Shown here in pieces: positions 28,184 to 52,556 of a DNA stretch of 64,000 nucleotides. The first letter of the stretch is position 1. Every line of letters starts with the position of its first letter. Made by a program: the position numbers and the translations under genes. The notes beneath the pieces are model-generated. The model had not been told where the DNA came from. It searched no databases and saw only the letters and a program-made list of their open reading frames with translations. The stretch spans positions 1 through 64,000 of IMG/VR virus record IMGVR_UViG_3300043446_005562; one strand, 5' to 3'.

Positions 28184-29389
28184 TTAATTACTTAGTGGGG
28201 CTTTAATTGTTGGGTGTGATTGATAATCTCTAATCTCAAAATCAGATATCTCAATATGTTCTATTTGTTCAATTAAACCAACATCAGGGTTCCAAAACTC
28301 ATCGTTAATAACTAATTTCGGTAACTTGAAAGGCTCTCTGGTTCTATACGGTATTTTATAACTAGCGTAGTACTCAGATAGCCCTCCGCCAAATGGCATT
28401 AGCTCGCTAACTGCAGTCGAATACGCATCTTCGCCCATTGCTTCCTTTAACAATTGGGCTCTTTCGTCAGGTGAATAGTATCTTCCTAACTGTTCTTCTA
28501 CTGCGTCTGCGTGGTTCAAATAGAGATGAGTGTCTCCAAGATTGCCAATCAATTGATCAGGAACCATATTAACTGCTTTGGCAATGATTTCAAGTAGTAA
28601 ACCATAAGAAGCAATGTTAAATGGTAAACCTAAGAATGTATCTACTGAACGTTGATTCCACATTAAAGAGATTGCTCTGGTTGGGATATTAAGTTTATCA
28701 CACTCTTTCATAAATTCTTTCATTTTAGTCTTTCCATCTCCGTAGTCTAAAAAGAAAAGAGGCCTATTAGTTAATTCAACTAATTTAACATACCTTTCAT
28801 TTTCACTCAACTCTCTTGTATAAACTTGAAATCCATAATGACAAGGTGGGAGTACCATTTGGTCTAATTCACCTACATTCCAAGCTGAAACCATTAGTCG
28901 TCTTGAGTCTGGATTTGTTTTAAGGTCGTTGATTAGGTTTTGGATTTGGTCTATTGGGTTGGTTAAATAATCTGATGGGTAAGTTGACCAACTTCTCCAT
29001 TGCTTACCATAAATTGGTCCTAGATCACCCCATTCCTCAGCAAACGCTTTATCCATTTTAATCCATTGGATAAATTCTGCTTGTGGCATTCCTTTATAAT
29101 CTGCATTTTGTAGGTAATTCTTATAAGCATCACCATTCCAAATATTACAACCATTATCAACTAAATACTTGATATTAGTATCACCTCTTAAGAACCATAG
29201 TAGCTCAATTACGATTGACTTCCAGTGCATTTTCTTTGTTGTAAGCAAAGGAAACCCATCTTTCATGTTGTGACGGATCGTATATCCAAATATTGACCGT
29301 GTGCCGGTTCCTGTGCGATCCTTTTTTACCACTCCATACTCATTAATTGCATGAAGTAGGTCAATGTACTGCTTATCGAGAGTGTTCAT
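28184..29389 (-). CDS. thyA: thymidylate synthase with two insertions
   Basis: DRTGTGT, FPLLTTK, ELLWFLRG, LGPIYGKQW, LPPCH, QRSVD..LGLPFNIASY. Confidence 0.97.
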   Translation of the reverse strand: MNTLDKQYIDLLHAINEYGVVKKDRTGTGTRSIFGYTIRHNMKDGFPLLTTKKMHWKSIVIELLWFLRGDTNIKYLVDNGCNIWNGDAYKNYLQNADYKGMPQAEFIQWIKMDKAFAEEWGDLGPIYGKQWRSWSTYPSDYLTNPIDQIQNLINDLKTNPDSRRLMVSAWNVGELDQMVLPPCHYGFQVYTRELSENERYVKLVELTNRPLFFLDYGDGKTKMKEFMKECDKLNIPTRAISLMWNQRSVDTFLGLPFNIASYGLLLEIIAKAVNMVPDQLIGNLGDTHLYLNHADAVEEQLGRYYSPDERAQLLKEAMGEDAYSTAVSELMPFGGGLSEYYASYKIPYRTREPFKLPKLVINDEFWNPDVGLIEQIEHIEISDFEIRDYQSHPTIKAPLSN

Positions 29390-32289: not shown

Positions 32290-33093
32290 TTATCGCTGAA
32301 CTTCAGGTACCCAATGCGTGGTCCGACCGTCCAATGTCTCTTCACGAATAACGGTATTTCCCTTGGAATCAAGCGGTTGAGCATACACTTCAAACTCAAA
32401 TACAAACTCTCCAAGGCCTCCGCCGACTCTTTGATAATTGCGAATGCTCGCTCCGCCCTGGTCGTATGAGGTCTGCATGATCTTTTTGATCCAGCCAAAG
32501 AGCACAGTCGACTCAACCGGGTCAATGTCCTTAACTAGCCGGTGGGGTGAAATTCCAGATCGATAGAGCACTTCGCACTTGATGTAATTGCCTATGCCTG
32601 CGCACACTCTCTGATCCATCAGCACCTCTGTAATGGTTTTGTTTGGGTACTTATTGATTCTCTGATTAAATTCAATAGGGGTGAAATCTGCATCATTCAG
32701 AGGATCTCGACCAAGGCTCTTAATCTTCTTATCGAGCTCAGCCCGGTCATGAGAAAATTTAATGGTGCCGAACCTACGCTGATCCACAAAATACAGGGCC
32801 CTGGAGTTCTCGATACCTATTCCAAAATGAGAATGCGTACCGCTTTCTTCTGACCAGTATCCGCTCATGCCCAAAGTTATCCACATGGTTGCACCAGTTT
32901 CAAACTCAAGCCACATGAACTTGCCACGAACTCCACCGTCTATTACCCGGCTCGGCAAAATCACCTGGTCCAGCCCAATTGGGCGCTTCTTGAGAAACCT
33001 GCCGCTAAATACCTGTAATTGGGTTACTCTGGATTCGCCGATCTCTTTTCTAAGATCCTCGTACACACGTCTGACTTCCGGTCCTTCTGGCAT
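32290..33093 (-). CDS. nei: Fpg/Nei DNA glycosylase/AP lyase, zincless-finger type
   Basis: N-terminal PEGPEV, RGKFMW, LGMSG, DQRRFG, H2TH GIGNY; no four-Cys finger; GRTTHW. Confidence 0.9.
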   Translation of the reverse strand: MPEGPEVRRVYEDLRKEIGESRVTQLQVFSGRFLKKRPIGLDQVILPSRVIDGGVRGKFMWLEFETGATMWITLGMSGYWSEESGTHSHFGIGIENSRALYFVDQRRFGTIKFSHDRAELDKKIKSLGRDPLNDADFTPIEFNQRINKYPNKTITEVLMDQRVCAGIGNYIKCEVLYRSGISPHRLVKDIDPVESTVLFGWIKKIMQTSYDQGGASIRNYQRVGGGLGEFVFEFEVYAQPLDSKGNTVIREETLDGRTTHWVPEVQR

Positions 33094-34584: not shown

Positions 34585-34607
34585 AATAATATTATACTTT
34601 ACTAAAC

Positions 34608-35878: not shown

Positions 35879-36853
35879 TTAAACTAGAGTATTTTCAAAA
35901 GCTCTTTTATCATCAAATTCCAGGTAGTTTTCAAGTAGACTATTGGAATTTTGACGATACTTAAGTACAGCTAGATCCTTGGCCTTTGCCTCGACCTCGA
36001 TGTCAAAAGTGAGTCCATAAGTATTTATTTGCTCATAGACATAATCGGCATGGGACCTAGCAATAACACTTGGATCCTCGAAAGTTTTTCGACAGCTTGA
36101 GTAATGAGTGAGAGGAGTTCGACCGTGCCAAGTGGTTGAGGCAAGGCGCAGAGCAGCCTCCTCGGTAAGATCGCCGGTATTGAAGCGATGATGATGAAAG
36201 TCAAAGGTAATGGGTGTACCGATTTTAAGATAGACCATTGAATAGAGATCGGCCACCGAGTACTGGGCAGCCTTGTCATCGTTTTCGACAACTAGCCTGG
36301 CACGTGTACTGTGCTTAAGCAGATTGAAATTTTCGCAGAACCTGGCCGCAGCAGCTTCCTTGTCGCCATAGGATCCACCTAGATGAATATTGATTGGAAA
36401 TTGATAGTCAATCGGCAAGCCCATTAGGGTCATGATTTCTGCATGCTGATCAAGATCCTTGACTGTTTTGCGAACAACCGCTGGATTTGGAGAACACAAA
36501 ACATCGAACTGGCCCGGGTGCATTGAGATACGCATGTTGTGTTTTAGCACAAACTCGCCAATCGCCTGCATGTCCTGTAAAATAAAGTCAAAGTTGGGCA
36601 GCTCGGTGATTTCGTATTCGGACATCCACGGAAAAATATCGCTGGACATGCGATACACCATAATGTTGTTTGCAAGATTCCACTCAAGTATCTTGAGAAT
36701 GTCACGTACGTTTTGATGGGCAAGCTCGCCGCAGTAGGCTGGGCCCTTTTCTTGAAAGGTACGCTTGATCATACCACGATTGGCAGTGATGCGTTGGTCG
36801 GCTAGAGACAGATTAATACAGCAATAGCCAAGTCTGACGTTAGAATTTTGCAT
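35879..36853 (-). CDS. uvsE: UV-damage endonuclease (UvsE/UvdE)
   Basis: RLGYCCIN, RMSSDIFP, SMHPGQF, LVVENDD, FDFHHH, HAD, EAKAKD; start at ATG 36853. Confidence 0.95.
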   Translation of the reverse strand: MQNSNVRLGYCCINLSLADQRITANRGMIKRTFQEKGPAYCGELAHQNVRDILKILEWNLANNIMVYRMSSDIFPWMSEYEITELPNFDFILQDMQAIGEFVLKHNMRISMHPGQFDVLCSPNPAVVRKTVKDLDQHAEIMTLMGLPIDYQFPINIHLGGSYGDKEAAAARFCENFNLLKHSTRARLVVENDDKAAQYSVADLYSMVYLKIGTPITFDFHHHRFNTGDLTEEAALRLASTTWHGRTPLTHYSSCRKTFEDPSVIARSHADYVYEQINTYGLTFDIEVEAKAKDLAVLKYRQNSNSLLENYLEFDDKRAFENTLV

Positions 36854-36866
36854 AGGTTTAATATAC

Positions 36867-36891
36867 AAAAAAGAGGACGCTAAGGTCCTCT
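36867..36891 (-). terminator. intrinsic terminator
   Basis: AGAGGAC/GTCCTCT stem plus T-run on minus strand. Confidence 0.65.
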
Positions 36892-37111: not shown

Positions 37112-37741
37112 TCAAAAGGTTATTTTTGTGTAATCAACGGTTACTGATCTCATTACTCTAATCACGTCAATTGCGTCCTGTAGAGCATCGTGAGTTACCT
37201 CACCTTCGACTCCAGCGCGTTTCATGCACTCGGCTAAATTAGGCAAGCCCTTATCGTTGGCCCAATCCATACACAGAATTGCTGGATCAATCATGCGCTG
37301 TCTGATTTGAATAGACGACGACCAGCCGGTTAGCTTCTGTAAGAACAGCTTGTCAAAGGTTGCAAAGTTTTTACCAGCAACGGTGATTCTAACTTGGCCA
37401 GTTTTTGACTCTGGGTCTCCCAAGCCGTGGGCCTGTAACCACATGCCCAAAGACTTTGCGACAAGACCCTCGGGCAAAATATTGTACTTTTTGCGAAGCT
37501 CAGCGCGTTCTTCTTTATTGGCGCGCTCCAACTCGCCAAGCTGAGCAAGAATATCCTTGTTCATGACTAGCGCAAATGGACTGCCTGTGTACTGTGGGTG
37601 TTCAACAAGGCATTTGAATCTAGGCAGATCATTAATCGGCACAAGATTTTCAGTATCCTCAATGACTGCCCCAATCTGAATGGTTTGGCAGGTTTCCGGA
37701 TCTAGCCCAGTTGTTTCAATGTCTATTGATACGTATTTCAT
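37112..37741 (-). CDS. DEDDh 3'-5' exonuclease
   Basis: IDIETTGLD, GKNFATFD, MID, HDALQDA. Confidence 0.92.
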   Translation of the reverse strand: MKYVSIDIETTGLDPETCQTIQIGAVIEDTENLVPINDLPRFKCLVEHPQYTGSPFALVMNKDILAQLGELERANKEERAELRKKYNILPEGLVAKSLGMWLQAHGLGDPESKTGQVRITVAGKNFATFDKLFLQKLTGWSSSIQIRQRMIDPAILCMDWANDKGLPNLAECMKRAGVEGEVTHDALQDAIDVIRVMRSVTVDYTKITF

Positions 37742-37754
37742 ACTTAATATTATA

Positions 37755-39179
37755 CTAATGTTTTACAGTAATGGTCTCAATCTGCAAATCGCCGAGGTGT
37801 TGACCGTTGTGCTTGTAGACAAAGACTTCGTACTTTTCGCTGGCCGGCACTGTGTATTCAAATGTGAATAGAGGTCGACCGTTCTTTAGTGGACGACAGC
37901 ACCCCTTTTCGCAAGATTCGCCCTGGACCTTGTGATCGCTACCAAAGAAAGTCATGTAGCCAGCAAAGCCCTCTGACGTAAGCATTGGCCAATCCTTGTC
38001 GGCATTGACATAGACCTCATAAACTCCTCTTGGTACCTTTGTGAATGATACAGTAATTTCAATTATTGCCTTATTGACAGTCGGCGCTGACTTGGCAGGC
38101 CTAATCGTTACGGCATCAGTTATTTGATCGTTTACTCGTATTGGGCGAGTTGACTGTCCAACCACTTGAGCTTTATGAAATTTTGCAAGCTGATGATTCT
38201 CACAAGGTCTGACCTCAGTGTCGTCGTAATCATAGTCCATTTCATACAGAATATCAATGATCTGTTCTGGCGTGTACTCAACTTTAGCGCCGTTTTCATC
38301 AAAGAAAACATAGGGCCACGGTGCAGATTTCAACTCTTCAAGAGTAACCTGCTGTCCATTTCTGGAATTGGTCCATTGCTGCCAGATTCTGTCAATATTG
38401 GAATGGTGCATCCAAAAGATGGGGTCAAAACCGGCGGTCGGCACCCAACCCATCAGTCCAGTGTTTGTGACTGTGCCGGTAATTGGATTATTAAAATGTA
38501 AATTACCCGTTACGTCGTTGCCCGCTCCTATGTAGTCGTGCATTGCACCGTGAGGAGCCGCATTGATTTGCAGATTGAATGATCGATAATCCGTGCACTC
38601 AAATAGTTTACCAAGGTATAGCGCTCTCTCAATTTCGCCAGAGATTGGATAGCCTCGATTCAAAGAGTCGAACCGACAGGCCTCATACAGGCTTGAATGA
38701 GGATCTCTAAAAGTTGCCTCTAGTCGTTTATGATCTTTCAGCCCACCCGTATAACCCCAATATGGTAACGCAAAATCTTTGTAACCGGAAAGGGTTCTGA
38801 CAATTTTTTCAAAATGATGAATGTAGAGTCGGTGCCAAACTAGAAAATGAATCTTCTCCTGTCCGCCTGGCGTGTGAGTGCAATTGTCCCAAGCCTCCTT
38901 TAAATCAGCTGGAGTTTGATAGGCATCGCATAGCGGATTGGGTTGAATTGTGTCCGGTATCCAATGAATCGCGCCCTGATAGTACCAACTTACGGGATCA
39001 ATGCAATTTTTGTTACGCATTATTCGTAATGCTTTTTCCATTGCCTGAATGTGGGGCACCGCCTCTGGCGAGTGCATTTCGTGTCGAACGTATCTCTTGT
39101 TATTAGAGGTCGGCCATTGACACGAGTGTAGGGCTGCAATTAGTACAACAATCCCAAATTTAATTAACGAATTTTTCAT
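37755..39179 (-). CDS. tyrosinase / polyphenol oxidase (type-3 copper), predicted lipoprotein
   Basis: CuA NCTH...HFLVWHRLY; CuB PHGAMHDYIG...FDPIFWMHHSNIDRIW; signal MKNSLIKFGIVVLIAALHS-C; start at ATG 39179. Confidence 0.9.
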   Translation of the reverse strand: MKNSLIKFGIVVLIAALHSCQWPTSNNKRYVRHEMHSPEAVPHIQAMEKALRIMRNKNCIDPVSWYYQGAIHWIPDTIQPNPLCDAYQTPADLKEAWDNCTHTPGGQEKIHFLVWHRLYIHHFEKIVRTLSGYKDFALPYWGYTGGLKDHKRLEATFRDPHSSLYEACRFDSLNRGYPISGEIERALYLGKLFECTDYRSFNLQINAAPHGAMHDYIGAGNDVTGNLHFNNPITGTVTNTGLMGWVPTAGFDPIFWMHHSNIDRIWQQWTNSRNGQQVTLEELKSAPWPYVFFDENGAKVEYTPEQIIDILYEMDYDYDDTEVRPCENHQLAKFHKAQVVGQSTRPIRVNDQITDAVTIRPAKSAPTVNKAIIEITVSFTKVPRGVYEVYVNADKDWPMLTSEGFAGYMTFFGSDHKVQGESCEKGCCRPLKNGRPLFTFEYTVPASEKYEVFVYKHNGQHLGDLQIETITVKH

Positions 39180-39192
39180 ACTGTGATATTTT

Positions 39193-39606
39193 TTAAAAAG
39201 GTAGATCATCATTGCTCCAGTCGAAATTGGTCTCGGCTTGAGGTTTTGTTTTTGTGTCAAGATCACCGAATGCGTCATCGTCAAAGTCGCCAGCATCAGC
39301 CGTTACGTTGATGTTTGAGTTCTTTTTCTGACCGCTGATTCGCCAAGCTTCAAGCGTCGTGAAGTACTTTACCGAACCTAATTTGTCGGTCCAGTCACGG
39401 CCCTTTATGTCAAATGAAACGGTTACGGTGTCGCCAACTGAGTAAGATTCCAACATATCACATTTTTCTTGCACAAGTTGGAATAGAATTTTTTGTGGGT
39501 ACTTATCTCCCACCTCAATTACGAATTCACGTTTACGGAATCCCTTATTGAAAGTTTGCGATGGAAAAATCTCAATGATGATTCCGGTTAAATCAAATTT
39601 GCTCAT
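39193..39606 (-). CDS. DUF3127 OB-fold protein (SSB-like, Bacteroidota-type)
   Basis: GFRKREFVIE..KYPQ.I.FQL, VSFDIKGRDW, YFTTLEAWRI, C-terminal DDLPF. Confidence 0.88.
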   Translation of the reverse strand: MSKFDLTGIIIEIFPSQTFNKGFRKREFVIEVGDKYPQKILFQLVQEKCDMLESYSVGDTVTVSFDIKGRDWTDKLGSVKYFTTLEAWRISGQKKNSNINVTADAGDFDDDAFGDLDTKTKPQAETNFDWSNDDLPF

Positions 39607-40090: not shown

Positions 40091-41383
40091 TTAAAATTCG
40101 CGATGTGTTTCATATACTGTTTTTATAACTGGAAATCTGAGTGAATGATTTCCGTGTTGATCTGTTGTCTCTTCAAAGAATTGCACGGTAATTGTTTTAC
40201 CTAGAATATCATTTGGGTTTTGAAAATAGTGTCGACGCTGTTCAAGCGAAAAGCCTGAACCCACTCTAACCTGATTGCCCCTGTGCTGCACAAAAACGGC
40301 CTTTAGCATTTCCTCCTCCTCTTCGCGCTCGTTTACGATAACCCTGTGAGTTCCCATCTCCAAGCCAGTCACCTCATACTCGGCATCGTGCATTTTTTTG
40401 ACCTTGAGTAGATTCTTTGAGCGCTTGCCCTCATAACCCACATCCTTACGAATCATGATGCCTTCATAGCCCATTTCGGTTGCATCAGCCGCGACCTTTT
40501 CAAAATGCTCGCGATCGACTAATTTGAACTGTGGCAACGGCTCAGCAAACTGTAGGCCAGATTCAATTAAGAAACCGTTTAGCATTATCAGTCTAGCCGA
40601 AAGAGTTATCTCACTTGAGCCAGCGGTAAATTCGTCAAGCTCTAATAGATCAAACACATAGTACTTTGGGGTTTCGATTGTGTGATCCTTTTTGCCGATC
40701 TCCTTGATTATTCCCTGGAAATCTTCAAGGCCGGACTCTCGCATGATACAAACCTCGCCGTCTAAAACCTTGGATCGAAGCCCTAATTTCATGAGATCCT
40801 GACGTAAGTTATCTAGGGTTAAGAATTCCTTGCCCTGTCTAGAAAAGAACTTGATCTGACCTGCCTCATCAATTACTGTGATGCAGCGAACTCCATCCAG
40901 CTTGCGGCTTGCCCACCACATACCCGAATCAAAGTCCACCTTCTTCTCGGCAGATTCAAACTTTTCAGCTAGGGCAACTTCAAATGTTGGTACCGTGCCC
41001 GGCAGAACTGAATTGATTAGTGTAGAAGTTGCTCTAGTTTTTATGTTGCGATCTATCACATCATAGATGATGTCTGCAAATTCCTGATATTTTAAGATAA
41101 AACCATTAACTGCCTGTATTGCAGTGTGGCCAGTCACACGACGTTCATTCAGATCATCGAGCATTTCAAACAGATCTAAATAATTATCAGAAATTAGATC
41201 GGATCTCTTTTTAAGATTGGCTGAAGTAACGTGGTACTGCTTAAACGGCGTGTACGTGTACTTAAATATTTTTCGTAGAAACGGAGAATCGTATTTTAAT
41301 AAAATCTCTTTTTTGGCATTCGTCGAAGACGTTGCCTTCATCTCTTCAATGAATTCTCTAAGTTTAATAAAATCAGTTTGCAT
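40091..41383 (-). CDS. ATP-dependent DNA ligase
   Basis: SRKLDGVRC, LDGEV, VFD, EGIMIR, LLKVK, RFP. Confidence 0.95.
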   Translation of the reverse strand: MQTDFIKLREFIEEMKATSSTNAKKEILLKYDSPFLRKIFKYTYTPFKQYHVTSANLKKRSDLISDNYLDLFEMLDDLNERRVTGHTAIQAVNGFILKYQEFADIIYDVIDRNIKTRATSTLINSVLPGTVPTFEVALAEKFESAEKKVDFDSGMWWASRKLDGVRCITVIDEAGQIKFFSRQGKEFLTLDNLRQDLMKLGLRSKVLDGEVCIMRESGLEDFQGIIKEIGKKDHTIETPKYYVFDLLELDEFTAGSSEITLSARLIMLNGFLIESGLQFAEPLPQFKLVDREHFEKVAADATEMGYEGIMIRKDVGYEGKRSKNLLKVKKMHDAEYEVTGLEMGTHRVIVNEREEEEEMLKAVFVQHRGNQVRVGSGFSLEQRRHYFQNPNDILGKTITVQFFEETTDQHGNHSLRFPVIKTVYETHREF

Positions 41384-41406
41384 AGAATTATTATACTATC
41401 TAAAAT

Positions 41407-44449: not shown

Positions 44450-45574
44450 ATGAAATATCTATTTGAATTTGCTCAGTATTCGTCAACTGGTTCGACCGAG
44501 TCCTCATTTGGTGTGCTTGGTGATTTGGGCAAAGACTCAAAGTTTGGCGAGCAGACCGGCTATTTCAAGAGCCTAATGCAGGAGGCCCAGGCCAGGGGAA
44601 TGGATGCGTTTGTCTTTACCGAATTTAGCCCAACCGGCGTGACTGCCTGGCAACTAAACGGCGATGATTGGGCCGAGTCTACTCGAGCAATACCTGGAGT
44701 ATTTTACGATCGAAGTTTCCGAAAAAAGAATGGAGCTGGCAAAACCTCAAATACTCGGGCCCTGTGCTCGCTTGGCTCAACTCCAATCAATTCACCGGAT
44801 TTTAGAAAACTTGCGCTCGACAAACACCTGATGTACGAGAATCTTAAGAATCACGAAATTGACGGCATGGGCTTGCCACATACTCAAAAGTTTAGTGAGG
44901 ACTCGACCATTGGCTTTTTAGAAAAGTGGCCGACTGCCATTTTAAAACCCAGGTTTGGGTCAGGCGGTCAAGGCATCATAAAGATCGCAAAGACCGGCAC
45001 CGATTATTCTCTTAACTACAAGGATCATTCATTAAGCTGTCAGGCTCATGAATTGAAAAACAAGATCAATGAGATTCGTCAAAAGATGAATTCCGATAAG
45101 CGACTCTATATTATTCAGGAGTGCATTGACCTGCCCAAATACAATAACGGGGTTTTTGACGTTAGGGTGATTTATCAGAAAGGCAAGGGTGGCAGCCCGC
45201 TTAGAACGGGCATGGCGGTCAGGCTCGCAGCACCAAATAAAGTAACAGCAAATCTGCACCAAGGCGGCAGCAGAGAAACTCTTGGCACAGTATTGGGCGA
45301 GCTGTTCAATCAGGACATGAACGGCCAGATAGCTGAGTCGATTCGCAAATACTCAAAACAGATATTTGAAATTCTAGACGATCGAGTTGGTCCAATTGGC
45401 GAAGTCGGTATTGACTTTTTGATTGATCAAACTGGCAAGGTGCACCTTATTGAGGTTAATTCCGTGCCCGGCCGAAATCTATTTCATATTTTGCCGGACA
45501 TTCGCCAGACCGCAATAAAGAGACCTGTTGAATACGCACAACACCTACTTGAAAAACAAAAAAAGTCGCACTAG
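44450..45574 (+). CDS. ATP-grasp ligase, YheC/YheD-like
   Basis: DKHLMY, ILKPRFGSGGQGI, IIQECI, FDVRV, NLHQGG, GIDFLID, IEVNSVPG. Confidence 0.88.
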   Translation: MKYLFEFAQYSSTGSTESSFGVLGDLGKDSKFGEQTGYFKSLMQEAQARGMDAFVFTEFSPTGVTAWQLNGDDWAESTRAIPGVFYDRSFRKKNGAGKTSNTRALCSLGSTPINSPDFRKLALDKHLMYENLKNHEIDGMGLPHTQKFSEDSTIGFLEKWPTAILKPRFGSGGQGIIKIAKTGTDYSLNYKDHSLSCQAHELKNKINEIRQKMNSDKRLYIIQECIDLPKYNNGVFDVRVIYQKGKGGSPLRTGMAVRLAAPNKVTANLHQGGSRETLGTVLGELFNQDMNGQIAESIRKYSKQIFEILDDRVGPIGEVGIDFLIDQTGKVHLIEVNSVPGRNLFHILPDIRQTAIKRPVEYAQHLLEKQKKSH

Positions 45575-46213: not shown

Positions 46214-46693
46214 TTAACGAAGTCTATCTAAAATTATTCGTTGAGATGCTGCAACATTTGCATAGGCCTGATCAATATCAACAAAACCGGCCCAATCCAA
46301 CTCTTCCTCTTGTAGATTCTGCTTTGGCACTCGAAGTCCATCGAGACCAATTTCCGCTGGATCAGATATTCTACACACAAGATAATGAATGTTATTTCTG
46401 AACTTTTTACCGCTCCAAACCTCAGCAGTTTGAATTGCCGGCTCTACCTGATCGGGTCTAATTTTTAATCCGGTCTCTTCAAAAGTTTCCCGGAAAGCGG
46501 CCGCCTCCGGCGATTCGCCCTCTTCCATTTTACCCTTGGGAATTCCCATTACGGGCTTGACCCAGCTTGAATTGGTTGGATGAACCAGCAAAATCATTTT
46601 TTTACCAGTGTCGACTTGAGTATAGACAATTGCAATGCCAGCTGAATCGCTTCTCTTTTTTGGAGCCGCGAAATTTTCAAAATCTTTAATCAT
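46214..46693 (-). CDS. Nudix hydrolase
   Basis: GKMEEGESPEAAAFRETFEETG Nudix box. Confidence 0.93.
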   Translation of the reverse strand: MIKDFENFAAPKKRSDSAGIAIVYTQVDTGKKMILLVHPTNSSWVKPVMGIPKGKMEEGESPEAAAFRETFEETGLKIRPDQVEPAIQTAEVWSGKKFRNNIHYLVCRISDPAEIGLDGLRVPKQNLQEEELDWAGFVDIDQAYANVAASQRIILDRLR

Positions 46694-46886: not shown

Positions 46887-47618
46887 TTATAAAATGTATG
46901 GACACTTTTTCAAAACTTCTTCTCTATTAATATACTCATTTAGATAGGTTTTGAGCATGTTATTTTGGACTTTGTGCTTGTACCATGCAGGCAACTTTCC
47001 AAGATAGGATTCATGAATTTTAAAATAGAGATTTACAAGTTCAGGTCGGTTTAACCTAAAGTTTTCCATTGCAAGCAGCACAGGTGCTTCCTCATCCAGA
47101 CCCAATCTAAATCTCATGAATTCTGAATCCAGCTTTGAGTGTAGAGTCTCGGTCAAATTGACCAATTGTTCGCGATAAGGTAGTCTGGTTAGATCTAAAT
47201 ACACGGGCTTACCGTCTATGATTTGACGAGCTCCAAATATTTGACCGTTGTGGGCCGCAATCTGCACCTGATTTTCAAATTTTGGTTTGGTAAAATACAG
47301 GGAACCCTTTTGAATTGGCGTAACGTTTAAGTGCCTGAAGGTCGGATAGGTTTTTATCTCAGACATTGGCGATACCACCGTGATAGGTGTTTTAAGTTTT
47401 CTTGCTCCAAATTTGCCAGTTGTGGAATTTGGAATGAATGCTGAGCCGGCAAGTCTATTGAAAACTTGATACGTTGAAAATTGATTTGGAATAATAGTTA
47501 ACAGTATCTCAGAATCCTGATCTCCATACAGATCCGGCATGTCATGATTTTCGCCGATCAGGCCAATTTTTTTAGAGTAGGTATCGTATACCTGAAAATC
47601 GTCAAACCTTTTTAGCAT
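46887..47618 (-). CDS. hypothetical protein, possibly a degenerate ATP-grasp fold
   Basis: AFIPNSTT...LKTPI and a spacing of later motifs reminiscent of ATP-grasp, but catalytic residues are not evident. Confidence 0.5.
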   Translation of the reverse strand: MLKRFDDFQVYDTYSKKIGLIGENHDMPDLYGDQDSEILLTIIPNQFSTYQVFNRLAGSAFIPNSTTGKFGARKLKTPITVVSPMSEIKTYPTFRHLNVTPIQKGSLYFTKPKFENQVQIAAHNGQIFGARQIIDGKPVYLDLTRLPYREQLVNLTETLHSKLDSEFMRFRLGLDEEAPVLLAMENFRLNRPELVNLYFKIHESYLGKLPAWYKHKVQNNMLKTYLNEYINREEVLKKCPYIL

Positions 47619-49960
47619 TAGCGTAGTGTTGATAATTTTCCTATTCTAAAAAATGACTCTTTAATTATATCGGTTGTCTGCAATTCATTTGGCAATTGAT
47701 TGGTTTCCCAAAGATGCAAAGTTTCGGTCTTTAATTGAGTCTTGTCGTCAGCTTTAATTTTGCCAGCCTTTTCAAGATCTTCAAGCACCTTGTCTATTCT
47801 AGACTGACTAGATTCGTTTGGCGAATAGGTTTTTAGATCATCGTCCCATATATCTGAAAAATAGGCTTTAACTCGTGGGCTCTGCTCAGATAATGGGTGT
47901 TGAGCATCAATGTTTGCATCTTGGCCTAGCTGCTTGAGAATTCCCTTTGTGTATTCGTTTAAGCCAGACTCTTCCCATTCCTTTTCCGTTCTTAAATCAG
48001 TTTGTCTGCGGTGTGGATCAATACCCTTTGGCATTTTTATCACGCAGCCAGTCGCTGCTTCAGCAACAGTCGCCTCACCAATACATGGATTTATTGATTT
48101 GGTTTTTTCAACTAATTTTGCCTTGGCCTCTTTTCCAGCATTCACCTGTTTCATTAATTCAGAGTAGCCTTCTGGGTTTGAGGTTTTGAATTTTTCAAGA
48201 TCATCGGGTGTAATATCAAGGCTTGTCTCTTCGTCTTTTTCAAAAACTATCTTGTTTAAAATTTGCTTGGTCTCCTTGATATTCAGAGAGACTGCACTCA
48301 TTGTGCCAGCCGCAGTTGCTTTAACCTTGTCCAAAGCTTCGTCTGGCGTACCGTTTACGAGGTACTTGGCACAATCACTACCTTTCAAAAAGGCTTTGAT
48401 TATGAAAACAATAAAGGCGCGACCGCTAATTCCACGATACGCCATTTTTCCCGTGAATTTGGCAAGATCCGCCTGTATTTTACCTAAATTTTGAGTGCTC
48501 TTTATTAAGAGCTCAGGGGATTCCTTGAATATTGCGGCAGTTTTAGCAACATTTGGAGATATTAACTTGCTAACAGCCGGATTCGTGATTACTTCATCCA
48601 TTAATTTGGAAACCGCTGCACTATCACCGGCTTTGATTGCATCGGCTAGTGCCTTATCTCCAAGTTTTGAACCTGATTTTCCAAGTTCAGCAATTAATTC
48701 TGGAGATTTTAGCAATTCATTTAGGCTCTTACCTGTTATTTGGCCTTCTTTTGCTAAAATATTACCAACAAGCTTTTCGGTCATTGCACCTTGAATGTAC
48801 ATTTTCTGGATTGAATCGGACGCGCCGTTTTTCATAATTGCTTTGAACCCATCTGACGTAATTATCTCAGCCTGCATTGCTTTATTGAAGCCTGGAATGT
48901 CTGCGAATTTTGCACCAATTTTTTCAGCATCTGCTGTTGCAATGCCGGCCGCCTTTGCTGCATCAGTTGATGCAATTGCAGCCTTTTCGCCGCTTGCAAC
49001 AAGCTTGGCGTCCTCTTTCATCAAGAGCTCTCCAGCCTCAGTTGCGCCTTTACCAAAGCTTGTCATTTTTAGAGCAAGCTCATCGATCCATTTAATAAGA
49101 CCGGTTGGTTTTGGGATGAGACCAAATGATACTTTATTGATTGCAAATCCAATAAATTCAGCAATTCCCTTGATTACCTTAAGAGCAGCGGTCGCAATAA
49201 ATTCGCCAATACCCTTTAAGGCTTTACCCATCGTTTCAATGATTCCGCCTGATGCCTTTGCTCCGGCTTCAATCTCCAGTGCGCCAGTTTTAAAAGCCAT
49301 GGTCTCAGCTTTGATTGCAGCACTTTCTCCCTTCCAGATAACGGCGAATAACTTTTCGCTAATTTTAGCAAAAGGCTTAATGATTCCCTTTAGGGCTCCA
49401 CCGATTACTTGACCTGTACCTGGAATTGCAACGACTAGATTAAGGCAGCCCATTAGATAATTTCCACGATAAAAAGAGATTGCAGCATTTAATAAATTGG
49501 CAACAGTATCAACTGGAATACCTGCCCAAGAAAAAGGAATAAGACCAATAATATCAAGCACAAATTGTAGGATTCCAATCGCAGATCCGCCCTCAGTCAT
49601 CATCGAGACAAAGTTCTTAACTGCATCTAGCAAACCCTCATTTATTGACTGTAGATTGTTAAGCGTATCAAGATAAGCTCCCTCCAGAGTCAAGAACACT
49701 GGATTATAACCGTGCTTGATTAAGTAATTTTCAGTTGCATTGATTTCATCAATTGTATCAAATGATTCTAGCAGTCCAAGTTGATGATCTAGGATCGCTG
49801 CTGCCTCCTGTTGGGTTGCAGGCTCATATTGGGTTAAGGTTAGAGAATCAAGATTTTGCCACATTTCGGCCGGAACGGCCATAATGGTTTCGCGTATTGA
49901 AGCTAGTTGAGAATCTTTGTCATAATTAAAGAATTCTTCAGCAGAAGATACATATTTCAT
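47618..49960 (-). CDS. large putative virion protein with pre-toxin TG (PT-TG)-like domain
   Basis: LDIIGLIPFSWAGIPVDTVANLLNAAISFYRGNYLMGCLNLVVAIPG; late promoter. Confidence 0.65.
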   Translation of the reverse strand: MKYVSSAEEFFNYDKDSQLASIRETIMAVPAEMWQNLDSLTLTQYEPATQQEAAAILDHQLGLLESFDTIDEINATENYLIKHGYNPVFLTLEGAYLDTLNNLQSINEGLLDAVKNFVSMMTEGGSAIGILQFVLDIIGLIPFSWAGIPVDTVANLLNAAISFYRGNYLMGCLNLVVAIPGTGQVIGGALKGIIKPFAKISEKLFAVIWKGESAAIKAETMAFKTGALEIEAGAKASGGIIETMGKALKGIGEFIATAALKVIKGIAEFIGFAINKVSFGLIPKPTGLIKWIDELALKMTSFGKGATEAGELLMKEDAKLVASGEKAAIASTDAAKAAGIATADAEKIGAKFADIPGFNKAMQAEIITSDGFKAIMKNGASDSIQKMYIQGAMTEKLVGNILAKEGQITGKSLNELLKSPELIAELGKSGSKLGDKALADAIKAGDSAAVSKLMDEVITNPAVSKLISPNVAKTAAIFKESPELLIKSTQNLGKIQADLAKFTGKMAYRGISGRAFIVFIIKAFLKGSDCAKYLVNGTPDEALDKVKATAAGTMSAVSLNIKETKQILNKIVFEKDEETSLDITPDDLEKFKTSNPEGYSELMKQVNAGKEAKAKLVEKTKSINPCIGEATVAEAATGCVIKMPKGIDPHRRQTDLRTEKEWEESGLNEYTKGILKQLGQDANIDAQHPLSEQSPRVKAYFSDIWDDDLKTYSPNESSQSRIDKVLEDLEKAGKIKADDKTQLKTETLHLWETNQLPNELQTTDIIKESFFRIGKLSTLR

Positions 49961-49986: not shown

Positions 49987-51048
49987 TTAGAGGTGACTAG
50001 CTATTTGGGTCAGGATTTTAAAGTAGTCTGAGCTCGAACAGTCAGACAAAAACTTGCTGATTTCAAAAAAGTCTTCTACTGTATCGAATGACATGGCCGG
50101 ATGAAATCTCGGATCTCGATATGAAACTGGAATTGTACCAAAGATGACAGATTCATAAACTCTCGCTGGTGTGAACTTCTGTTCAAGATAAAGATCCTTG
50201 CTCACATTTACTGATACTTGAGCAAGTTGCATACTTTGCCAAATGGTGGCCCTGTCTGCTCGTGAGCACAAGGCAACACGCTTCATACCAGCAAGCCACG
50301 ATTCAAGAGCGGGGTCCTGCTTTGCAGCAAGTAACATTGAGAATGGAGTGCCATCAAATTTTGAAGTTTCATCAACTGCTGAAATAATGTCCCTAATTAT
50401 CGGATTCTTTGAATGACCCTCTTTGTAATTAACAAATGAAAGATTGCCGTAATACACTAGATAATTTGGCACCTTGTTTGCGGATTTTTCATGAACCGCC
50501 AGACATTCATTAATGAATTGCTGACTGCAGCCTGGCATCGTAATTGATGGAATTTGTCTGGTGATTCCCAACTTGGAGATTGTATCTACGAAGGTTTGAG
50601 GTAGAGAAAGATCCGTATCTAGAATAACAATATCGGCCGGGTTATAACCGGTTTGAAGTGCAAGCTCAATAATTCTTTCAAAGTAGGCTGCGTCCTTTAA
50701 TTTTTTTTGCAGAGTTGAAAGATTTCTAAATCTGGCTTTTAAAAATATTTTTGAGTAGCGCTTATTTCTAATATTTTCAATTACTTGACCTGAGCCTATT
50801 TGATATTCATCAATCAAGCTGTCTGAAAATTTGGTGAAGACCTTTCCTAACGGATCCCTTGGAAAGACTGGTTTAGAGGTTGAGTCGCCTATTGGATTAA
50901 CATAATTCAAAAAGTCAAACTTTTCAACTCCATACATTTTTGAAAGTTCATCAATCAGACCCAATTGATAAAATGTGTGGCCTGGAATATCATCATTGAA
51001 TAATCCTAATTGGCCAAAGTAGGCGTAGAGTGCTTTGTTCGTTTCCAT
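49987..51048 (-). CDS. GT-B glycosyltransferase resembling T4 DNA beta-glucosyltransferase
   Basis: ILDTDLSLP, LVYYGNLSF and FTPARVYESV align by eye with recalled T4 BGT YLFTDIRLP, VIYGGSFR and ITLRVWETM; similar length (353 aa). Confidence 0.6.
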   Translation of the reverse strand: METNKALYAYFGQLGLFNDDIPGHTFYQLGLIDELSKMYGVEKFDFLNYVNPIGDSTSKPVFPRDPLGKVFTKFSDSLIDEYQIGSGQVIENIRNKRYSKIFLKARFRNLSTLQKKLKDAAYFERIIELALQTGYNPADIVILDTDLSLPQTFVDTISKLGITRQIPSITMPGCSQQFINECLAVHEKSANKVPNYLVYYGNLSFVNYKEGHSKNPIIRDIISAVDETSKFDGTPFSMLLAAKQDPALESWLAGMKRVALCSRADRATIWQSMQLAQVSVNVSKDLYLEQKFTPARVYESVIFGTIPVSYRDPRFHPAMSFDTVEDFFEISKFLSDCSSSDYFKILTQIASHL

Positions 51049-51425
51049 AATACGTATTTTACTAGGACTCCATCATTTGGTTCTATATCAAGTCGATTAT
51101 TGTAGAAAATATCCCAAGAGTCTGCCGCGTATTGACCAATTCCATAGAGCTCACGCGGGTGAGTCCACGGTCTTTCAAGCCACTCGGTGCTAAACCTAAT
51201 TAGGGATTTAGCTCGACGATTATAGAAACCCAGAGGTCTCAGTATTTCAGACAATTGAGCCGAGTCCGCCTGTGACATTGCTTGCGCGCTAGGATACTTG
51301 GTGAAAAGCTCATCCCTAATTCGATCCACTTGAACTCTTCTGGTGCAATTCAATAAAATACAACAGACCTGAGATTTCCAAGGATCCTTATGATAGATTT
51401 CTTGAAGTAATTGAAATGGACTCAT
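51006..51425 (-). CDS. MBD4-like HhH-GPD DNA glycosylase (T/U:G mismatch type)
   Basis: DPWK..VCCILLN.T, KYPSA, LRPLGFYNRRAK, ELYGIGQYAADSWDIF with catalytic Asp retained. Confidence 0.88.
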   Translation of the reverse strand: MSPFQLLQEIYHKDPWKSQVCCILLNCTRRVQVDRIRDELFTKYPSAQAMSQADSAQLSEILRPLGFYNRRAKSLIRFSTEWLERPWTHPRELYGIGQYAADSWDIFYNNRLDIEPNDGVLVKYVLWKRTKHSTPTLAN

Positions 51426-52226
51426 TTACACGTTTTTAAAACCGGCAAAGTGAGTAATAAAATGTTTGTTCGTGGCAGCGCTGCGATTAACAAAGATTCT
51501 GTCAAAATTATTCTCCATAATTGACATTACTTCATTAAATTTAGCTAGTCGATTTTCAAGCAACCAGCTATAGTGAAAATGATACTCGACAATGAATAGT
51601 TTAATGTGACTCCAATCAGTAATTGACTTAATCATTTCATATTCCATGCCCTCAATGTCCATCTTTACACAGTTAACCTTTTTAAGCACGTCATTGATAT
51701 TTTCAGCTGGGACATGTACGACTTTACGGCCCTTCACTGGATGAACTGAGTGTTTACCTGAATCCTGTGATAAAAAGAATTCAACCTCAGATTCGTGGCC
51801 AGGTACAATTGCCTTTTCAATAATTTCACAACGATCCTGCACACCATTCATTTCCAAATTCTGTTGAGCAAATTCAACATTATTATGGAAAGGTTCATAG
51901 GAGTACACCTTCTTGATTCGTGGAAATTGGGTCAATAGTCTAGTTGCAAAAATACCGATGTGTGCACCAGCGTCTAACCAAGTATCCTCCTGATTGAGAT
52001 CTTCTAGGGTCAGCGGATTGCCGTCCTGTGCATAATGCGGTAAAAATAGGGGTTTAAAATACTCTCCACCGGTTGGCTTCATCGAGATATTTTGAGACAC
52101 GTTAAATTTTATTTCGTCTTCTGAGCGAACTAAAAATTGATATTCGTGGTATTTAGTTTTCTTTTCAAAAACTTGAAGGGTTCCTGCTTCACGAGCTTCC
52201 TCAATCGAGCATAATACGTCTGCCAT
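51426..52226 (-). CDS. FkbM-family SAM-dependent methyltransferase
   Basis: WLDAGAHIG, YEP, KMDIEGME, VEYH. Confidence 0.9.
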   Translation of the reverse strand: MADVLCSIEEAREAGTLQVFEKKTKYHEYQFLVRSEDEIKFNVSQNISMKPTGGEYFKPLFLPHYAQDGNPLTLEDLNQEDTWLDAGAHIGIFATRLLTQFPRIKKVYSYEPFHNNVEFAQQNLEMNGVQDRCEIIEKAIVPGHESEVEFFLSQDSGKHSVHPVKGRKVVHVPAENINDVLKKVNCVKMDIEGMEYEMIKSITDWSHIKLFIVEYHFHYSWLLENRLAKFNEVMSIMENNFDRIFVNRSAATNKHFITHFAGFKNV

Positions 52227-52259
52227 TATCTAAGTAGTGTTTAGACTATTATACTACAA

Positions 52260-52556
52260 TTACTTATCTTGGTCTAGATTGAATGGAGTATCTTTGATTG
52301 AAAGTTTGCTCTGGTCGTCTTTGTTTACTCCAGATATTTGATAATCAGAATCTTTTGGCTTCTCTAATTTTTCAATATCTGTTGCTTTTACTCTGAGCAT
52401 ACGGTTGTCTGAAGTCATTATTTGATAGACACCGTTGGTTGGATCGGTTCCGACAATTCTACCGGTACGGCCATCATTAAGGACGATTCGATTACCGGCT
52501 TTGTACTTAGATGAGGTTGGAGAGACTAGTGTAATGTCCTCAGCCTCATTTAGGCT
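52260..52556 (-). CDS. start-less 98-aa reading frame continuing gene 52550-54088 in the -1 frame (SH3/KOW-like)
   Basis: SLNEAEDITLVSPTSSKYKAGNRIVLNDGRTGRIVGTDPTNGVYQIMTSDNRMLRVKATDIEKLE...; begins at an A9 run. Confidence 0.55.
   Translation of the reverse strand, partial: SLNEAEDITLVSPTSSKYKAGNRIVLNDGRTGRIVGTDPTNGVYQIMTSDNRMLRVKATDIEKLEKPKDSDYQISGVNKDDQSKLSIKDTPFNLDQDK

What the first reader, a model, noticed from the sequence alone, without database searches (positions are those of the whole stretch)
49987..52255. Candidate new DNA hypermodification operon: FkbM methyltransferase, MBD4-like glycosylase, BGT-like glycosyltransferase
Seen: three tightly coupled genes (TAA-ATG abutment, then a 43-nt overlap) behind their own AGTATAAT promoter, the class used by replication genes. 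The third resembles T4 beta-glucosyltransferase by eye, including the TD-x-x-LP catalytic-Asp region. The glycosylase keeps the MBD4 catalytic Asp. Known: BGT glucosylates hydroxymethylcytosine, FkbM enzymes O-methylate sugars and hydroxyls, and MBD4 excises T/U/hmU opposite G. Inference: the phage installs a sugar on a base, methylates it to defeat glucosyl-specific nucleases, and uses the glycosylase to repair deaminated modified C or edit mis-modified sites. The enzyme making the acceptor base is not in this window.
Basis: partly seen in the sequence, partly recalled or inferred. Interest (0 to 1): 0.85.

Follow-up and report, generated by a model that had tools for sequence, protein, structure and literature searches.

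The report
Phage sugar-transferase, methylase, DNA-glycosylase operon
A 252-kb freshwater phage carries a conserved gene trio (a methyltransferase, an MBD4-type DNA repair glycosylase and a new kind of sugar-transferase) that most likely decorates a base in the phage's DNA with a sugar. The base it acts on was not found, and DNA modification is inferred, not shown.

Summary
Three coupled minus-strand genes lie at 49987-52226 behind a conserved TAGTATAAT element.

- **Methyltransferase:** a bona fide FkbM-family member.
- **Glycosylase:** a close homolog of the MBD4 glycosylase domain (E 1e-29), with the catalytic Asp (D118) kept.
- **Glycosyltransferase (GT):** matches no Pfam or PDB sequence. 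Its confident AlphaFold model is a GT-B fold whose best PDB neighbour is T4 beta-glucosyltransferase (BGT; E 2e-6), with near-ties to lipid and glycan GTs.

- **For a DNA role:** the GT belongs to a tiny family (59 representatives in 1.84 billion proteins). Nearly every locus of its distant members that has context lies in a DNA-metabolism neighbourhood, preceded by a P-loop kinase-like gene. Most also have a UDG-superfamily gene before the GT, and four lineages have a T4 gp42-like ThyA homolog (Asp at both diagnostic positions) beside or within 2 kb of it.
- **Core pair:** in the window's clade, MT and GT are stable partners (54 of 58 unique loci). The glycosylase is facultative (26 of 58, at least 11 gains or losses) and occurs elsewhere without them, once next to UvdE.
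- **Against:** no acceptor-making enzyme was found in 73.5 kb of this genome. The window's ThyA is a canonical thymidylate synthase.
- **Unverified:** the TD-x-x-LP match to BGT Asp100 was not confirmed by any alignment.

Sugar O-methylation is inference only.

The parts
52248..52255 (-). AGTATAAT (-10-like) element, 21 nt upstream of the MT start codon; putative promoter of the operon
   Evidence: Sequence. The octamer occurs 6 times against 2.07 expected. It is conserved at the same distance upstream of MT in diverged relatives, and also precedes the ligase and exonuclease genes. Function as a promoter is inferred.
51426..52226 (-). FkbM-family SAM-dependent methyltransferase (266 aa); presumed O-methyltransferase that tailors the GT product
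   Evidence: PF05050 E 1.3e-11 and phrog_8156. Family invariants are D85-x-G-x-H, E111, D155SGKH159, K188-M-D-x-E-G-x-E195 and E214-x-H216, with no invariant Cys. The AF2 model has pLDDT 92.3 and matches only generic class I MTases. The gene is present in 54 of 58 unique GT loci.
51006..51425 (-). Stand-alone MBD4-type HhH-GPD DNA glycosylase (139 aa); facultative member of the cluster
   Evidence: E 1.2e-29 to the MBD4 glycosylase domain and PF00730. Q8, Y99 and the catalytic D118 are invariant in 29 homologs, while the Arg-finger position is Cys27 and varies. Present in 26 of 58 unique loci.
49987..51048 (-). GT-B fold glycosyltransferase of a new, very small family (353 aa); probable DNA-base glycosyltransferase
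   Evidence: AF2 pLDDT 92.3. Foldseek top PDB hit is T4 BGT, E 2e-6. hhalign against a BGT family profile gives E 5e-4 over the C-domain only. The family has 59 representatives in 1.84e9 proteins. Distant homologs sit in dCMP-modification and replication modules.
52260..52418 (-). Small conserved ORF (52 aa) immediately upstream; syntenic but of unknown function and probably outside the operon
   Evidence: Homologs lie upstream of MT in many of the related loci, mainly the closer ones.
47618..49960 (-). 780-aa Ala/Gly-rich protein of unknown function, 26 nt downstream of the GT with no terminator; probably co-transcribed
   Evidence: It is syntenic in all related loci with enough context. No family match, and the Atlas score was below noise.
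46887..47618 (-). 243-aa protein of unknown function whose start overlaps the stop of the 780-aa gene; likely the same transcription unit
   Evidence: synteny in the closer relatives.

Best explanation
This is a tailoring module for a glycosylated base in the DNA of a roughly 252-kb T4-like jumbo phage. Terminase and gp15-like genes lie nearby; the closest cultured relatives infect Flavobacterium.

**Proposed roles**
- The 353-aa GT-B enzyme transfers a sugar from a nucleotide-sugar to a hydroxyl-bearing pyrimidine in phage DNA, most likely a 5-hydroxymethyl- or 5-hydroxy-cytosine.
- The FkbM methyltransferase, its near-constant partner, then O-methylates the attached sugar, or possibly a competing hydroxyl.
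- The MBD4-type glycosylase, present in about half of the clade, is an active mismatch glycosylase. It removes U, T or 5-hmU opposite G, that is, deaminated (modified) cytosines. It helps but is dispensable.
- The genes are expressed from a conserved TAGTATAAT element shared with the ligase and exonuclease genes.

**Shown here:** gene structure, family and fold assignments, conservation of catalytic residues, synteny and its variation, and the genomic contexts of distant homologs.

**Inferred:** DNA as the acceptor, the identity of the base, the sugar, the methylation target, and the timing of expression.
For: **1. Distant homologs point to DNA.**
- GT homologs at 23-34% identity (E 1e-19 to 1e-60 against the family profile) were found in 10 distinct loci outside the clade. 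Nearly all with context lie in DNA-replication or nucleotide-metabolism neighbourhoods.
- Every locus with upstream context has a P-loop kinase-like gene before the GT. Eight also have a UDG-superfamily gene (the L091 fragment shows only the UDG gene).
- In four lineages (L092/L096, L094/L101, L099, L201/L202) a ThyA homolog lies beside the GT or within 2 kb. Each has Asp at both the E. coli L143 and N177 positions. This is the T4 gp42 signature of dCMP-modifying enzymes (criteria in PMC13326640).
- T4 b-gt lies next to gene 42, and the Lactobacillus phage ATCCB BGT homolog lies next to a ThyA homolog.

**2. The acceptor-binding half is conserved.** 13 of the 22 residues invariant across both subfamilies lie in the N-terminal half, which in GT-B enzymes binds the acceptor. 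They include H24, K104, R106, N109, S111, D119, D144 and D146.

**3. Structure.** The best PDB neighbour of the confident model is T4 BGT. That E-value is in the range reported for experimentally validated phage DNA GT-B enzymes (bioRxiv 10.1101/2023.12.21.572611).

**4. Profile alignment to BGT.** A profile-profile alignment to a 7-member BGT family gives E 5e-4. It pairs G201/K209/G211/K214/R296/E299 with BGT G188/R191/G193/R195/R269/E272.

**5. A DNA glycosylase sits in the cluster.** It lies between MT and GT on both sides of the deepest split of the GT tree.

**6. Shared upstream element.** The same octamer precedes the ligase and DEDD exonuclease genes.

**7. MT and GT co-occur** in 54 of 58 unique loci, with only 3 changes on the tree.

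**8. No palindrome avoidance.** No 4-mer palindrome is under-represented in the window. This is compatible with protected DNA but is weak evidence.
Against: - No enzyme that could make a hydroxylated acceptor base was found in 73.5 kb of this genome. The window's ThyA is a canonical TS, and profile searches found no second ThyA, kinase-like or UDG-like gene.
- A gp42-like ThyA found in two relatives (L212, L204) belongs to a type present in only 5 IMG/VR contigs. None of these appears in the lists of GT-bearing contigs (those lists show 80 of 93).
- The cluster sits among genes of unknown function, about 12 kb from the packaging and tail genes.
- FkbM enzymes are typical of glycan and natural-product pathways. 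No paper in the searched library links FkbM to phage DNA modification.
- Structural near-ties include ManT, PimA, WaaC and OGT.
- Sequence similarity to BGT is marginal and confined to the nucleotide-sugar-binding half.
- The glycosylase is lost repeatedly and is found in repair contexts elsewhere. The window also encodes Fpg/Nei, UvdE and ligase, so the glycosylase may simply be one more repair gene.
Confidence: 0.45

Rival explanations
1. Glycan or protein glycosylation. The GT and the FkbM O-methyltransferase build an O-methylated sugar on a virion protein, a host surface polysaccharide or a lipid-linked acceptor. This would resemble mycobacterial methylmannose polysaccharide synthesis or capsid glycosylation in some phages. 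The MBD4-like gene would be an unrelated repair gene that happens to be inserted there.
For: - FkbM family membership.
- Foldseek near-ties to ManT 7qsg, PimA, WaaC and OGT.
- The cluster lies among uncharacterised genes near the terminase and tail genes, and a second GT (GT9-like) lies at 72.5-73.5 kb.
- No acceptor-base enzyme was found.
- The glycosylase is facultative and found elsewhere in repair contexts.
- Most phage GT-containing contigs are not next to base-modification genes (10.1101/2023.12.21.572611).
Against: - Nearly all distant GT homologs with context lie in DNA-metabolism modules, and four lineages carry gp42-like ThyA homologs.
- The N-terminal (acceptor) half holds most of the family invariants.
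- No NDP-sugar synthesis, flippase or polysaccharide genes lie within 10 kb on either side.
- The upstream element is shared with the ligase and exonuclease genes.
Confidence: 0.27
2. Two independent functions share one transcription unit. The GT does modify DNA. The glycosylase is a general base-excision repair enzyme for U:G and T:G mismatches in a UV-exposed aquatic phage, with no special link to the modification. The MT acts on something else (a small molecule, RNA or protein).
For: - The window carries a broad repair set: Fpg/Nei, UvdE, ligase, DEDD exonuclease and NUDIX.
- An MBD4-like homolog lies directly after UvdE in marine phage contigs.
- Glycosylase presence changes at least 11 times on the GT tree.
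- The MT fold search gives no substrate information.
Against: - MT and GT co-occur in 54 of 58 unique loci with only 3 changes, which argues for a functional pair.
- A glycosylase-fold gene (UDG superfamily) also directly precedes the GT in most distant homolog loci. This recurrence with an unrelated fold is hard to ascribe to chance.
Confidence: 0.18
3. Anti-host weapon. The glycosylase excises unmodified pyrimidines from host DNA, or from superinfecting phage DNA, while the phage's own DNA is shielded by the glycosyl (and methyl) group. This would be analogous to T4 nucleases that attack cytosine-containing DNA.
For: A glycosylase-fold gene adjoins the GT in two subfamilies, using different folds. 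The Arg-finger position that reads the opposite G in MBD4 is Cys27 here and varies across the family (the residue's role is from memory of the MBD4 literature).
Against: - The base pocket and catalytic residues are those of MBD4 (Q8, Y99, D118), an enzyme restricted to mismatches.
- The gene is lost often without loss of the GT.
- It occurs in phages that lack the GT.
Confidence: 0.06

Closest known systems
T4 beta-glucosyltransferase (BGT; Pfam PF09198, CAZy GT63) with gene 42 dCMP hydroxymethylase
   Same: - GT-B fold, and the best PDB neighbour.
- The C-domain motifs align: G188/R191/G193/R195/R269/E272 against G201/K209/G211/K214/R296/E299.
- A forced global alignment puts H24 on E22.
- Distant homologs of the window GT sit next to gp42-like ThyA genes, as b-gt sits next to gene 42.
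   Different: - No Pfam match, and hhalign probability is 31% at best.
- The N-domain is not alignable, and Lys replaces the phosphate-binding Arg residues.
- About 44 extra residues lie between strand 2 and the LKARFRN strand.
- No hydroxymethylase is nearby in this genome.
- The partners are an FkbM MTase and an MBD4-like glycosylase, which T4 lacks.
Phage 5mYOX/C5-MTase-associated GT-B DNA glycosyltransferases (subclass III: GT53, GT66, GT94; bioRxiv 10.1101/2023.12.21.572611)
   Same: These are metagenomic phage GT-B enzymes whose only link to BGT is a Foldseek E-value of 1e-5 to 1e-7, yet they were shown to glycosylate 5hmC in DNA. The window GT has the same level of similarity.
   Different: No C5-MTase or 5mYOX/TET is near the window GT. 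Homology to those enzymes was not tested because their sequences were not at hand. No methyltransferase acting on the sugar is described in that paper (no mention of FkbM or O-methyl).
RB69 / DLP3 5-hydroxycytosine arabinosylation clusters (PMC13326640)
   Same: A ThyA homolog with N177D and L143D/E substitutions supplies the acceptor for DNA glycosyltransferases. The ThyA homologs next to distant GT relatives carry the same two substitutions.
   Different: The window's own ThyA is canonical. No NDP-arabinose genes are present, and the GT family is different.
Mammalian MBD4 glycosylase domain (PDB 4ew4, 1ngn, 4e9e)
   Same: E 1e-29 over the whole domain, with the catalytic Asp and pocket residues kept. 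MBD4 excises T, U and 5-hmU opposite G (from my own knowledge of the literature).
   Different: The phage protein has no methyl-CpG-binding domain and is only 139 aa. The Arg-finger position is Cys27. It is phage-encoded and widespread in aquatic phage contigs.
Mycobacterial methylmannose polysaccharide pathway (ManT GT-B plus O-methyltransferases)
   Same: A GT-B enzyme is paired with SAM O-methyltransferase(s) to make O-methylated sugars. ManT 7qsg is the third-best structural hit. The pathway logic is from my own knowledge.
   Different: The acceptor there is a free oligosaccharide, the genomic context is cellular, and no DNA enzymes are involved.

Membership tests
T4 beta-glucosyltransferase family (PF09198 / GT63) | GT-B two-Rossmann-domain fold | tested here: met
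   AF2 model with pLDDT 92.3 and pTM 0.91. Foldseek top hit is 1nzd, E 2e-6, probability 1.0.
T4 beta-glucosyltransferase family (PF09198 / GT63) | Significant sequence or profile match to the family | tested here: not met
   No Pfam hit for the protein, nor for PF09198 among 29 family members. hhalign against T4 BGT gives probability below 1%. Against a 7-sequence BGT profile it gives E 5e-4 and probability 31%, over the C-domain only.
T4 beta-glucosyltransferase family (PF09198 / GT63) | Catalytic Asp100 (FTDIRLP) equivalent | tested here: inconclusive
   DTDLSLP (D144 and D146 invariant) resembles the motif as a string. The global profile alignment instead places BGT 98-104 on residues 78-88, which are not conserved. 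By strand count, D146 follows the fifth strand and not the fourth. A structural superposition was not available.
T4 beta-glucosyltransferase family (PF09198 / GT63) | UDP-binding residues R191, R195, R269, E272 | tested here: inconclusive
   They align with K209, K214, R296 and E299 in a marginal alignment. K214, R296 and E299 are invariant in the family.
T4 beta-glucosyltransferase family (PF09198 / GT63) | Glycosylation of 5-hmC in duplex DNA | not testable with these tools
   Needs an enzyme assay.
Phage pre-replicative cytosine hypermodification pathway (gp42-like ThyA + dNMP kinase + DNA GT) | ThyA homolog with Asp at the E. coli L143 and N177 positions in the same genome | tested here: not met
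   The window ThyA keeps Leu and Asn. There is no second ThyA in 73.5 kb; the remaining 179 kb of the contig were not read. The feature is met for distant GT homologs.
FkbM methyltransferase family (PF05050) | Profile match above the gathering threshold, with SAM-binding motif I and the KxDxEGxE motif | tested here: met
   45.4 bits against 22.7. Invariants are W83-x-D85-x-G87-x-H89, E111 and K188-M-D190-x-E192-G-x-E195.
FkbM methyltransferase family (PF05050) | O-methylation of a hydroxyl (sugar or other) | not testable with these tools
   The fold search returns only generic class I MTases. There is no invariant Cys, so a C5-pyrimidine methylase mechanism is unlikely.
MBD4-type HhH-GPD mismatch glycosylase | Full-length similarity to the MBD4 glycosylase domain, with the HhH motif and catalytic Asp | tested here: met
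   E 1.2e-29 over residues 2-133. D118 aligns with the Asp that is mutated to Asn in 4evv. D118 is invariant in 29 homologs.
MBD4-type HhH-GPD mismatch glycosylase | Arg finger (human R468) that fills the gap and reads the opposite G | tested here: not met
   The aligned residue is Cys27, and the position varies (C/R/Q/L) in the family. The residue numbering and role are from memory of the MBD4 literature.
MBD4-type HhH-GPD mismatch glycosylase | N-terminal methyl-CpG-binding domain | tested here: not met
   The protein is 139 aa and consists of the glycosylase domain only.
Phage or cellular glycan-synthesis cluster | Neighbouring NDP-sugar synthesis, flippase, polymerase or further GT genes | tested here: not met
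   None within 10 kb on either side in the window or in relatives. A GT9-like gene lies about 21 kb away.

The most novel reading that the evidence does not exclude
A previously unseen DNA hypermodification: an O-methylated glycosyl group on a pyrimidine, made by a new DNA-GT family together with an FkbM methyltransferase. In this family a DNA-glycosylase-fold protein would be a dedicated partner of the GT rather than a passenger repair gene. It might proofread or remove deaminated or unmodified pyrimidines so that only the modified base persists. That partnership would have arisen twice from unrelated folds: UDG superfamily in the distant subfamily and HhH-GPD/MBD4 in the window's clade.
Probability: 0.2. 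Interest if true: 0.8.

Novelty: new variant of a known kind. Interest (0 to 1): 0.62.

Why it matters
Glycosylated bases are the classic phage answer to restriction enzymes. Hosts answer in turn with enzymes that recognise the sugar, including type IV nucleases and DNA glycosylases; both are discussed in PMC13216743 and PMC12191111, which turned up but which I did not read.

A GT family that no library names, tied by context to cytosine-modification pathways and here paired with a sugar-type O-methyltransferase, would do two things if confirmed:
- add a new enzyme family to the DNA-modification toolbox;
- possibly add a new chemical class, a methylated sugar on DNA.

The repeated placement of a glycosylase-fold gene directly before the GT, with two unrelated folds, points to a link between base excision and hypermodification. 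I found no description of such a link in the library searches I ran.

The enzymes could also be useful reagents for labelling or protecting modified cytosines.

Tried and rejected
**Searches that found nothing**
- DNA and protein searches of the GT region against 50,697 deposited phage genomes gave no match.
- Sequence and profile searches of the GT against the PDB gave nothing.
- hhalign of the GT family against the single T4 BGT sequence was not significant.
- The fold search of the MT model returned only generic class I methyltransferases, with no substrate information.
- Atlas searches for the flanking 780-aa and 512-aa proteins scored below the noise level.

**Arguments I dropped**
- Isoelectric point as an argument against DNA binding. 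The window GT has pI 6.25 and T4 BGT 9.05, but the BGT family itself has a median of 6.6.
- CpG depletion as a sign of 5mC deamination. The ratio is 0.95, so there is no signal.
- The window ThyA as a hydroxymethylase. It is a canonical TS.
- The MT as a C5-pyrimidine methylase. It has no invariant Cys.

**The hunt for the acceptor enzyme**
- I read 9.5 kb past the window end and 8.4 kb before the window start in a relative.
- I scanned IMG/VR with two gp42-like ThyA profiles.
- No such gene was found on any contig seen to carry the GT. The lists show 80 of 93 GT contigs, and 179 kb of this genome remain unread.

**A misassignment corrected**
- I first took the GND Asp (D102) for the MBD4 catalytic residue. 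I corrected it to D118 using the D-to-N mutant entry 4evv.
Full report
**What is there**

The window is the first 64 kb of IMG/VR contig IMGVR_UViG_3300043446_005562, which is 252,618 bp long.
- The closest cultured relatives by single proteins are Flavobacterium phages. Large metagenomic phage records (LR7565xx, 462-735 kb) also match.
- Just past the window lie PhoH, T4-type large and small terminase genes and a gp15-like tail gene. This is therefore a T4-like jumbo myovirus.

| Gene | Coordinates | Length |
|---|---|---|
| MT | 51426-52226 | 266 aa |
| Glycosylase | 51006-51425 | 139 aa |
| GT | 49987-51048 | 353 aa |

The MT stop and the glycosylase ATG abut. The glycosylase and GT genes overlap by 43 nt.

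AGTATAAT lies 21 nt before the MT ATG.
- The octamer is over-represented in the window: 6 against 2.07 expected.
- It is kept upstream of MT in relatives whose surrounding sequence has diverged.
- It directly precedes the DNA ligase and DEDD exonuclease genes.
- Only 26 nt and no terminator separate the GT from the next gene. The unit probably runs on through the 780-aa and 243-aa genes.

**The three proteins**

*Methyltransferase.*
- It is a clear FkbM family member (PF05050, 45.4 bits against a cut-off of 22.7).
- Its family invariants are the SAM motif and the K-M-D-x-E-G-x-E motif. There is no invariant cysteine, so a C5-pyrimidine methylase mechanism is unlikely.
- Its confident model matches only generic class I methyltransferases.

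*Glycosylase.*
- It matches the MBD4 glycosylase domain over its whole length (E 1.2e-29).
- The catalytic Asp is D118. It aligns with the residue that is Asn in the mutant entry 4evv.
- Q8, Y99 and D118 are invariant in 29 homologs. The position of the MBD4 arginine finger is Cys27 here and varies across the family (residue roles are from memory of the MBD4 literature).

*Glycosyltransferase.*
- It has no Pfam, PHROG or PDB sequence match.
- With a 50-sequence alignment, AlphaFold gives pLDDT 92.3 and pTM 0.91.
- Foldseek ranks T4 BGT first (1nzd, E 2e-6). ManT, PimA, SenB, WaaC and OGT follow within two orders of magnitude.
- Against a BGT family profile that I built from seven phage sequences, hhalign gives E 5e-4 and probability 31%, over the nucleotide-sugar-binding half only. 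It pairs G201/K209/G211/K214/R296/E299 with BGT G188/R191/G193/R195/R269/E272.
No alignment pairs them. A forced global alignment puts the BGT motif on unconserved residues 78-88, though it does put H24 on BGT E22. The equivalence stays open.

**How the cluster behaves in relatives**

The GT family is very small: 59 representatives among 1.84 billion proteins. All members are unannotated.

In 80 IMG/VR loci of the window's clade the order is: 512-aa gene, small ORF, MT, [glycosylase], GT, 780-aa gene. On a tree of 58 unique GT sequences:
- MT is present in 54, with 3 changes;
- the glycosylase is present in 26, with at least 11 changes (7 forced by well-supported branches), on both sides of the deepest split.

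Two loci have the glycosylase and GT without MT. Two have the GT alone.

Homologs of the glycosylase are common in aquatic phage contigs that lack MT and GT.
- One lies directly after UvdE, next to peptide deformylase and MazG genes.
- Another overlaps the end of a gp23 capsid gene.

MT and GT are therefore the core. The glycosylase is an ancient but dispensable companion.

**The evidence that bears on the acceptor**

Distant GT homologs (23-34% identity, with all 22 family invariants kept) were traced to 10 distinct loci.
- A P-loop kinase-like gene precedes the GT wherever upstream sequence is available. The L091 fragment shows only the gene immediately upstream.
- A UDG-superfamily gene (motifs G-x-A-P-G and H-P-S-Y, nearest to family 4 UDGs) accompanies it in eight loci.
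- The surrounding genes are primase, dUTPase, DNA polymerase A or B, dCMP deaminase and RecA.
- In four lineages a ThyA homolog adjoins the GT or lies within 2 kb.
- All of these ThyA homologs have Asp at both the E. coli L143 and N177 positions, as does T4 gp42. According to PMC13326640, these two substitutions mark enzymes that take dCMP and make something other than a methyl group (5-hydroxymethyl- or 5-hydroxy-dCMP).
- The arrangement mirrors gene 42 next to b-gt in T4, and the ThyA homolog next to the BGT homolog in Lactobacillus phage ATCCB.
- Thirteen of the 22 family invariants lie in the N-terminal half, which binds the acceptor in GT-B enzymes. The window GT most likely shares the acceptor class of its distant relatives.

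**What speaks against a DNA role**

No source of a hydroxylated base was found.
- The window's ThyA homolog (28184-29389) scores 3e-90 on the TS profile. It keeps Leu and Asn at the two diagnostic positions and the C-terminal KAP motif. T4 also has a canonical TS besides gp42, so this is neutral.
- Profile searches of 73.5 kb of the contig found no second ThyA, kinase-like or UDG-like gene. No Tet/JBP or C5-MTase domain was seen either.
- Two relatives (L212 and L204) do carry a gp42-like ThyA between ClpB-like and ClpP genes. That type occurs in only five IMG/VR contigs, none of them in the lists of GT-bearing contigs (the lists show 80 of 93).
- About 179 kb of this genome were not read.

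Other points against:
- The neighbouring genes have no known function.
- FkbM enzymes are at home in glycan chemistry.
- The phage has a broad repair set (Fpg/Nei, UvdE, ligase, exonuclease, NUDIX) into which an MBD4-like enzyme fits without any link to modification.

**Conclusion**

The best reading, at a confidence of about 0.45, is a DNA-base glycosylation module. A new BGT-like GT family is paired with an O-methyltransferase that tailors the product, and a facultative MBD4-type glycosylase deals with deaminated (modified) cytosines.

The main rival, at about 0.27, is glycan or protein glycosylation with a passenger repair gene.

The most interesting unexplained point is that a glycosylase-fold gene stands directly before the GT in both subfamilies, but with unrelated folds: UDG superfamily in one and HhH-GPD in the other.

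Nothing here shows a modified nucleoside. That requires mass spectrometry or enzyme assays.

Noticed in passing
L092/L096, L094/L101, L095, L097, L098, L099, L198, L201 (GT homolog loci): A conserved cassette of a P-loop kinase-like gene (310-400 aa, no Pfam family), a UDG-superfamily gene (GxAPG ... HPSY, lacking the family 4 Glu) and the GT homolog. It lies inside replication modules, often with a gp42-like ThyA homolog and a dCMP deaminase. It looks like an undescribed cytosine-hypermodification cassette in its own right.
   Followed up: partly
window 37755-39296 (-): A 513-aa ORF with a tyrosinase central domain (PF00264, E 1.8e-25). This is unusual for a phage. It lies in the unit downstream of the ligase, guanylate-kinase-like and DUF3127 genes.
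   Followed up: no
window 28184-29389 (-): The thymidylate synthase is canonical at its catalytic and specificity residues but is 401 aa long, with two large insertions (roughly residues 194-240 and 305-376). Flavobacterium phage 'immuto' has the same long form (55% identity).
   Followed up: partly
window 41390-41397, 37749-37756, 34591-34598 (all -): AGTATAAT lies only 6-7 nt before the ATG of the ligase gene, the DEDD exonuclease gene and a short ORF. Two of these follow a terminator-like hairpin with a T-run. If the octamer is a -10 element, these mRNAs would be leaderless or nearly so. The MT operon has a 21-nt spacing.
   Followed up: partly
window 2581-3300 (-) and 63538 to beyond 64000 (-; full gene in L183:9372-9998): Two phage-encoded sigma-70-family factors. 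They may be what reads the TAGTATAAT class or a late class of promoters.
   Followed up: no
window 32290-33093, 35879-36868, 40091-41383, 37112-37741, 46214-46693: A dense repair set: Fpg/Nei glycosylase, UvdE UV endonuclease, ATP-dependent ligase, DEDD exonuclease and NUDIX hydrolase. With the MBD4-like enzyme, the phage could carry out much of base-excision repair itself.
   Followed up: partly
window 19533-20561 (-), 14387-14944 (-), 14997-15659 (+), 44450-45574 (+): A histone-deacetylase-family protein, a CAP/SCP-domain protein, a non-specific DNA/RNA endonuclease (Endonuclease_NS) and a YheC/D-type ATP-grasp enzyme. These are unusual accessory genes of unknown role.
   Followed up: no
L183:74-1048 (contig 72.5-73.5 kb): A second glycosyltransferase, GT9 (heptosyltransferase-like, PF01075, E 6.5e-8), lies next to a gp15-like tail gene. 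It is relevant to the rival reading that this phage glycosylates something other than DNA.
   Followed up: no
L212:3627-4529 and L204:5121-6014: Two relatives of the window phage (contigs of 256 kb and 139 kb) carry a gp42-like ThyA homolog (Asp/Asp signature). In L212, where the flanking genes were scanned, it lies between a ClpB-like AAA ATPase and ClpP. The window has no counterpart at the syntenic place. This type is in only 5 IMG/VR contigs.
   Followed up: partly
L001:11351-11539 and L090:9047-9229: Relatives encode a ribosomal protein S21 homolog just upstream of the NUDIX gene. It was not looked for in the window.
   Followed up: no
L004:3415-3735: In one sublineage an unrelated 106-aa ORF occupies the place of the glycosylase between MT and GT (no similarity).
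   Followed up: partly
L199:2865-3527: An intermediate GT homolog lies near a GmrSD_N-like (DUF262) gene and a Lar restriction-alleviation gene, that is, a restriction/anti-restriction context.
   Followed up: no
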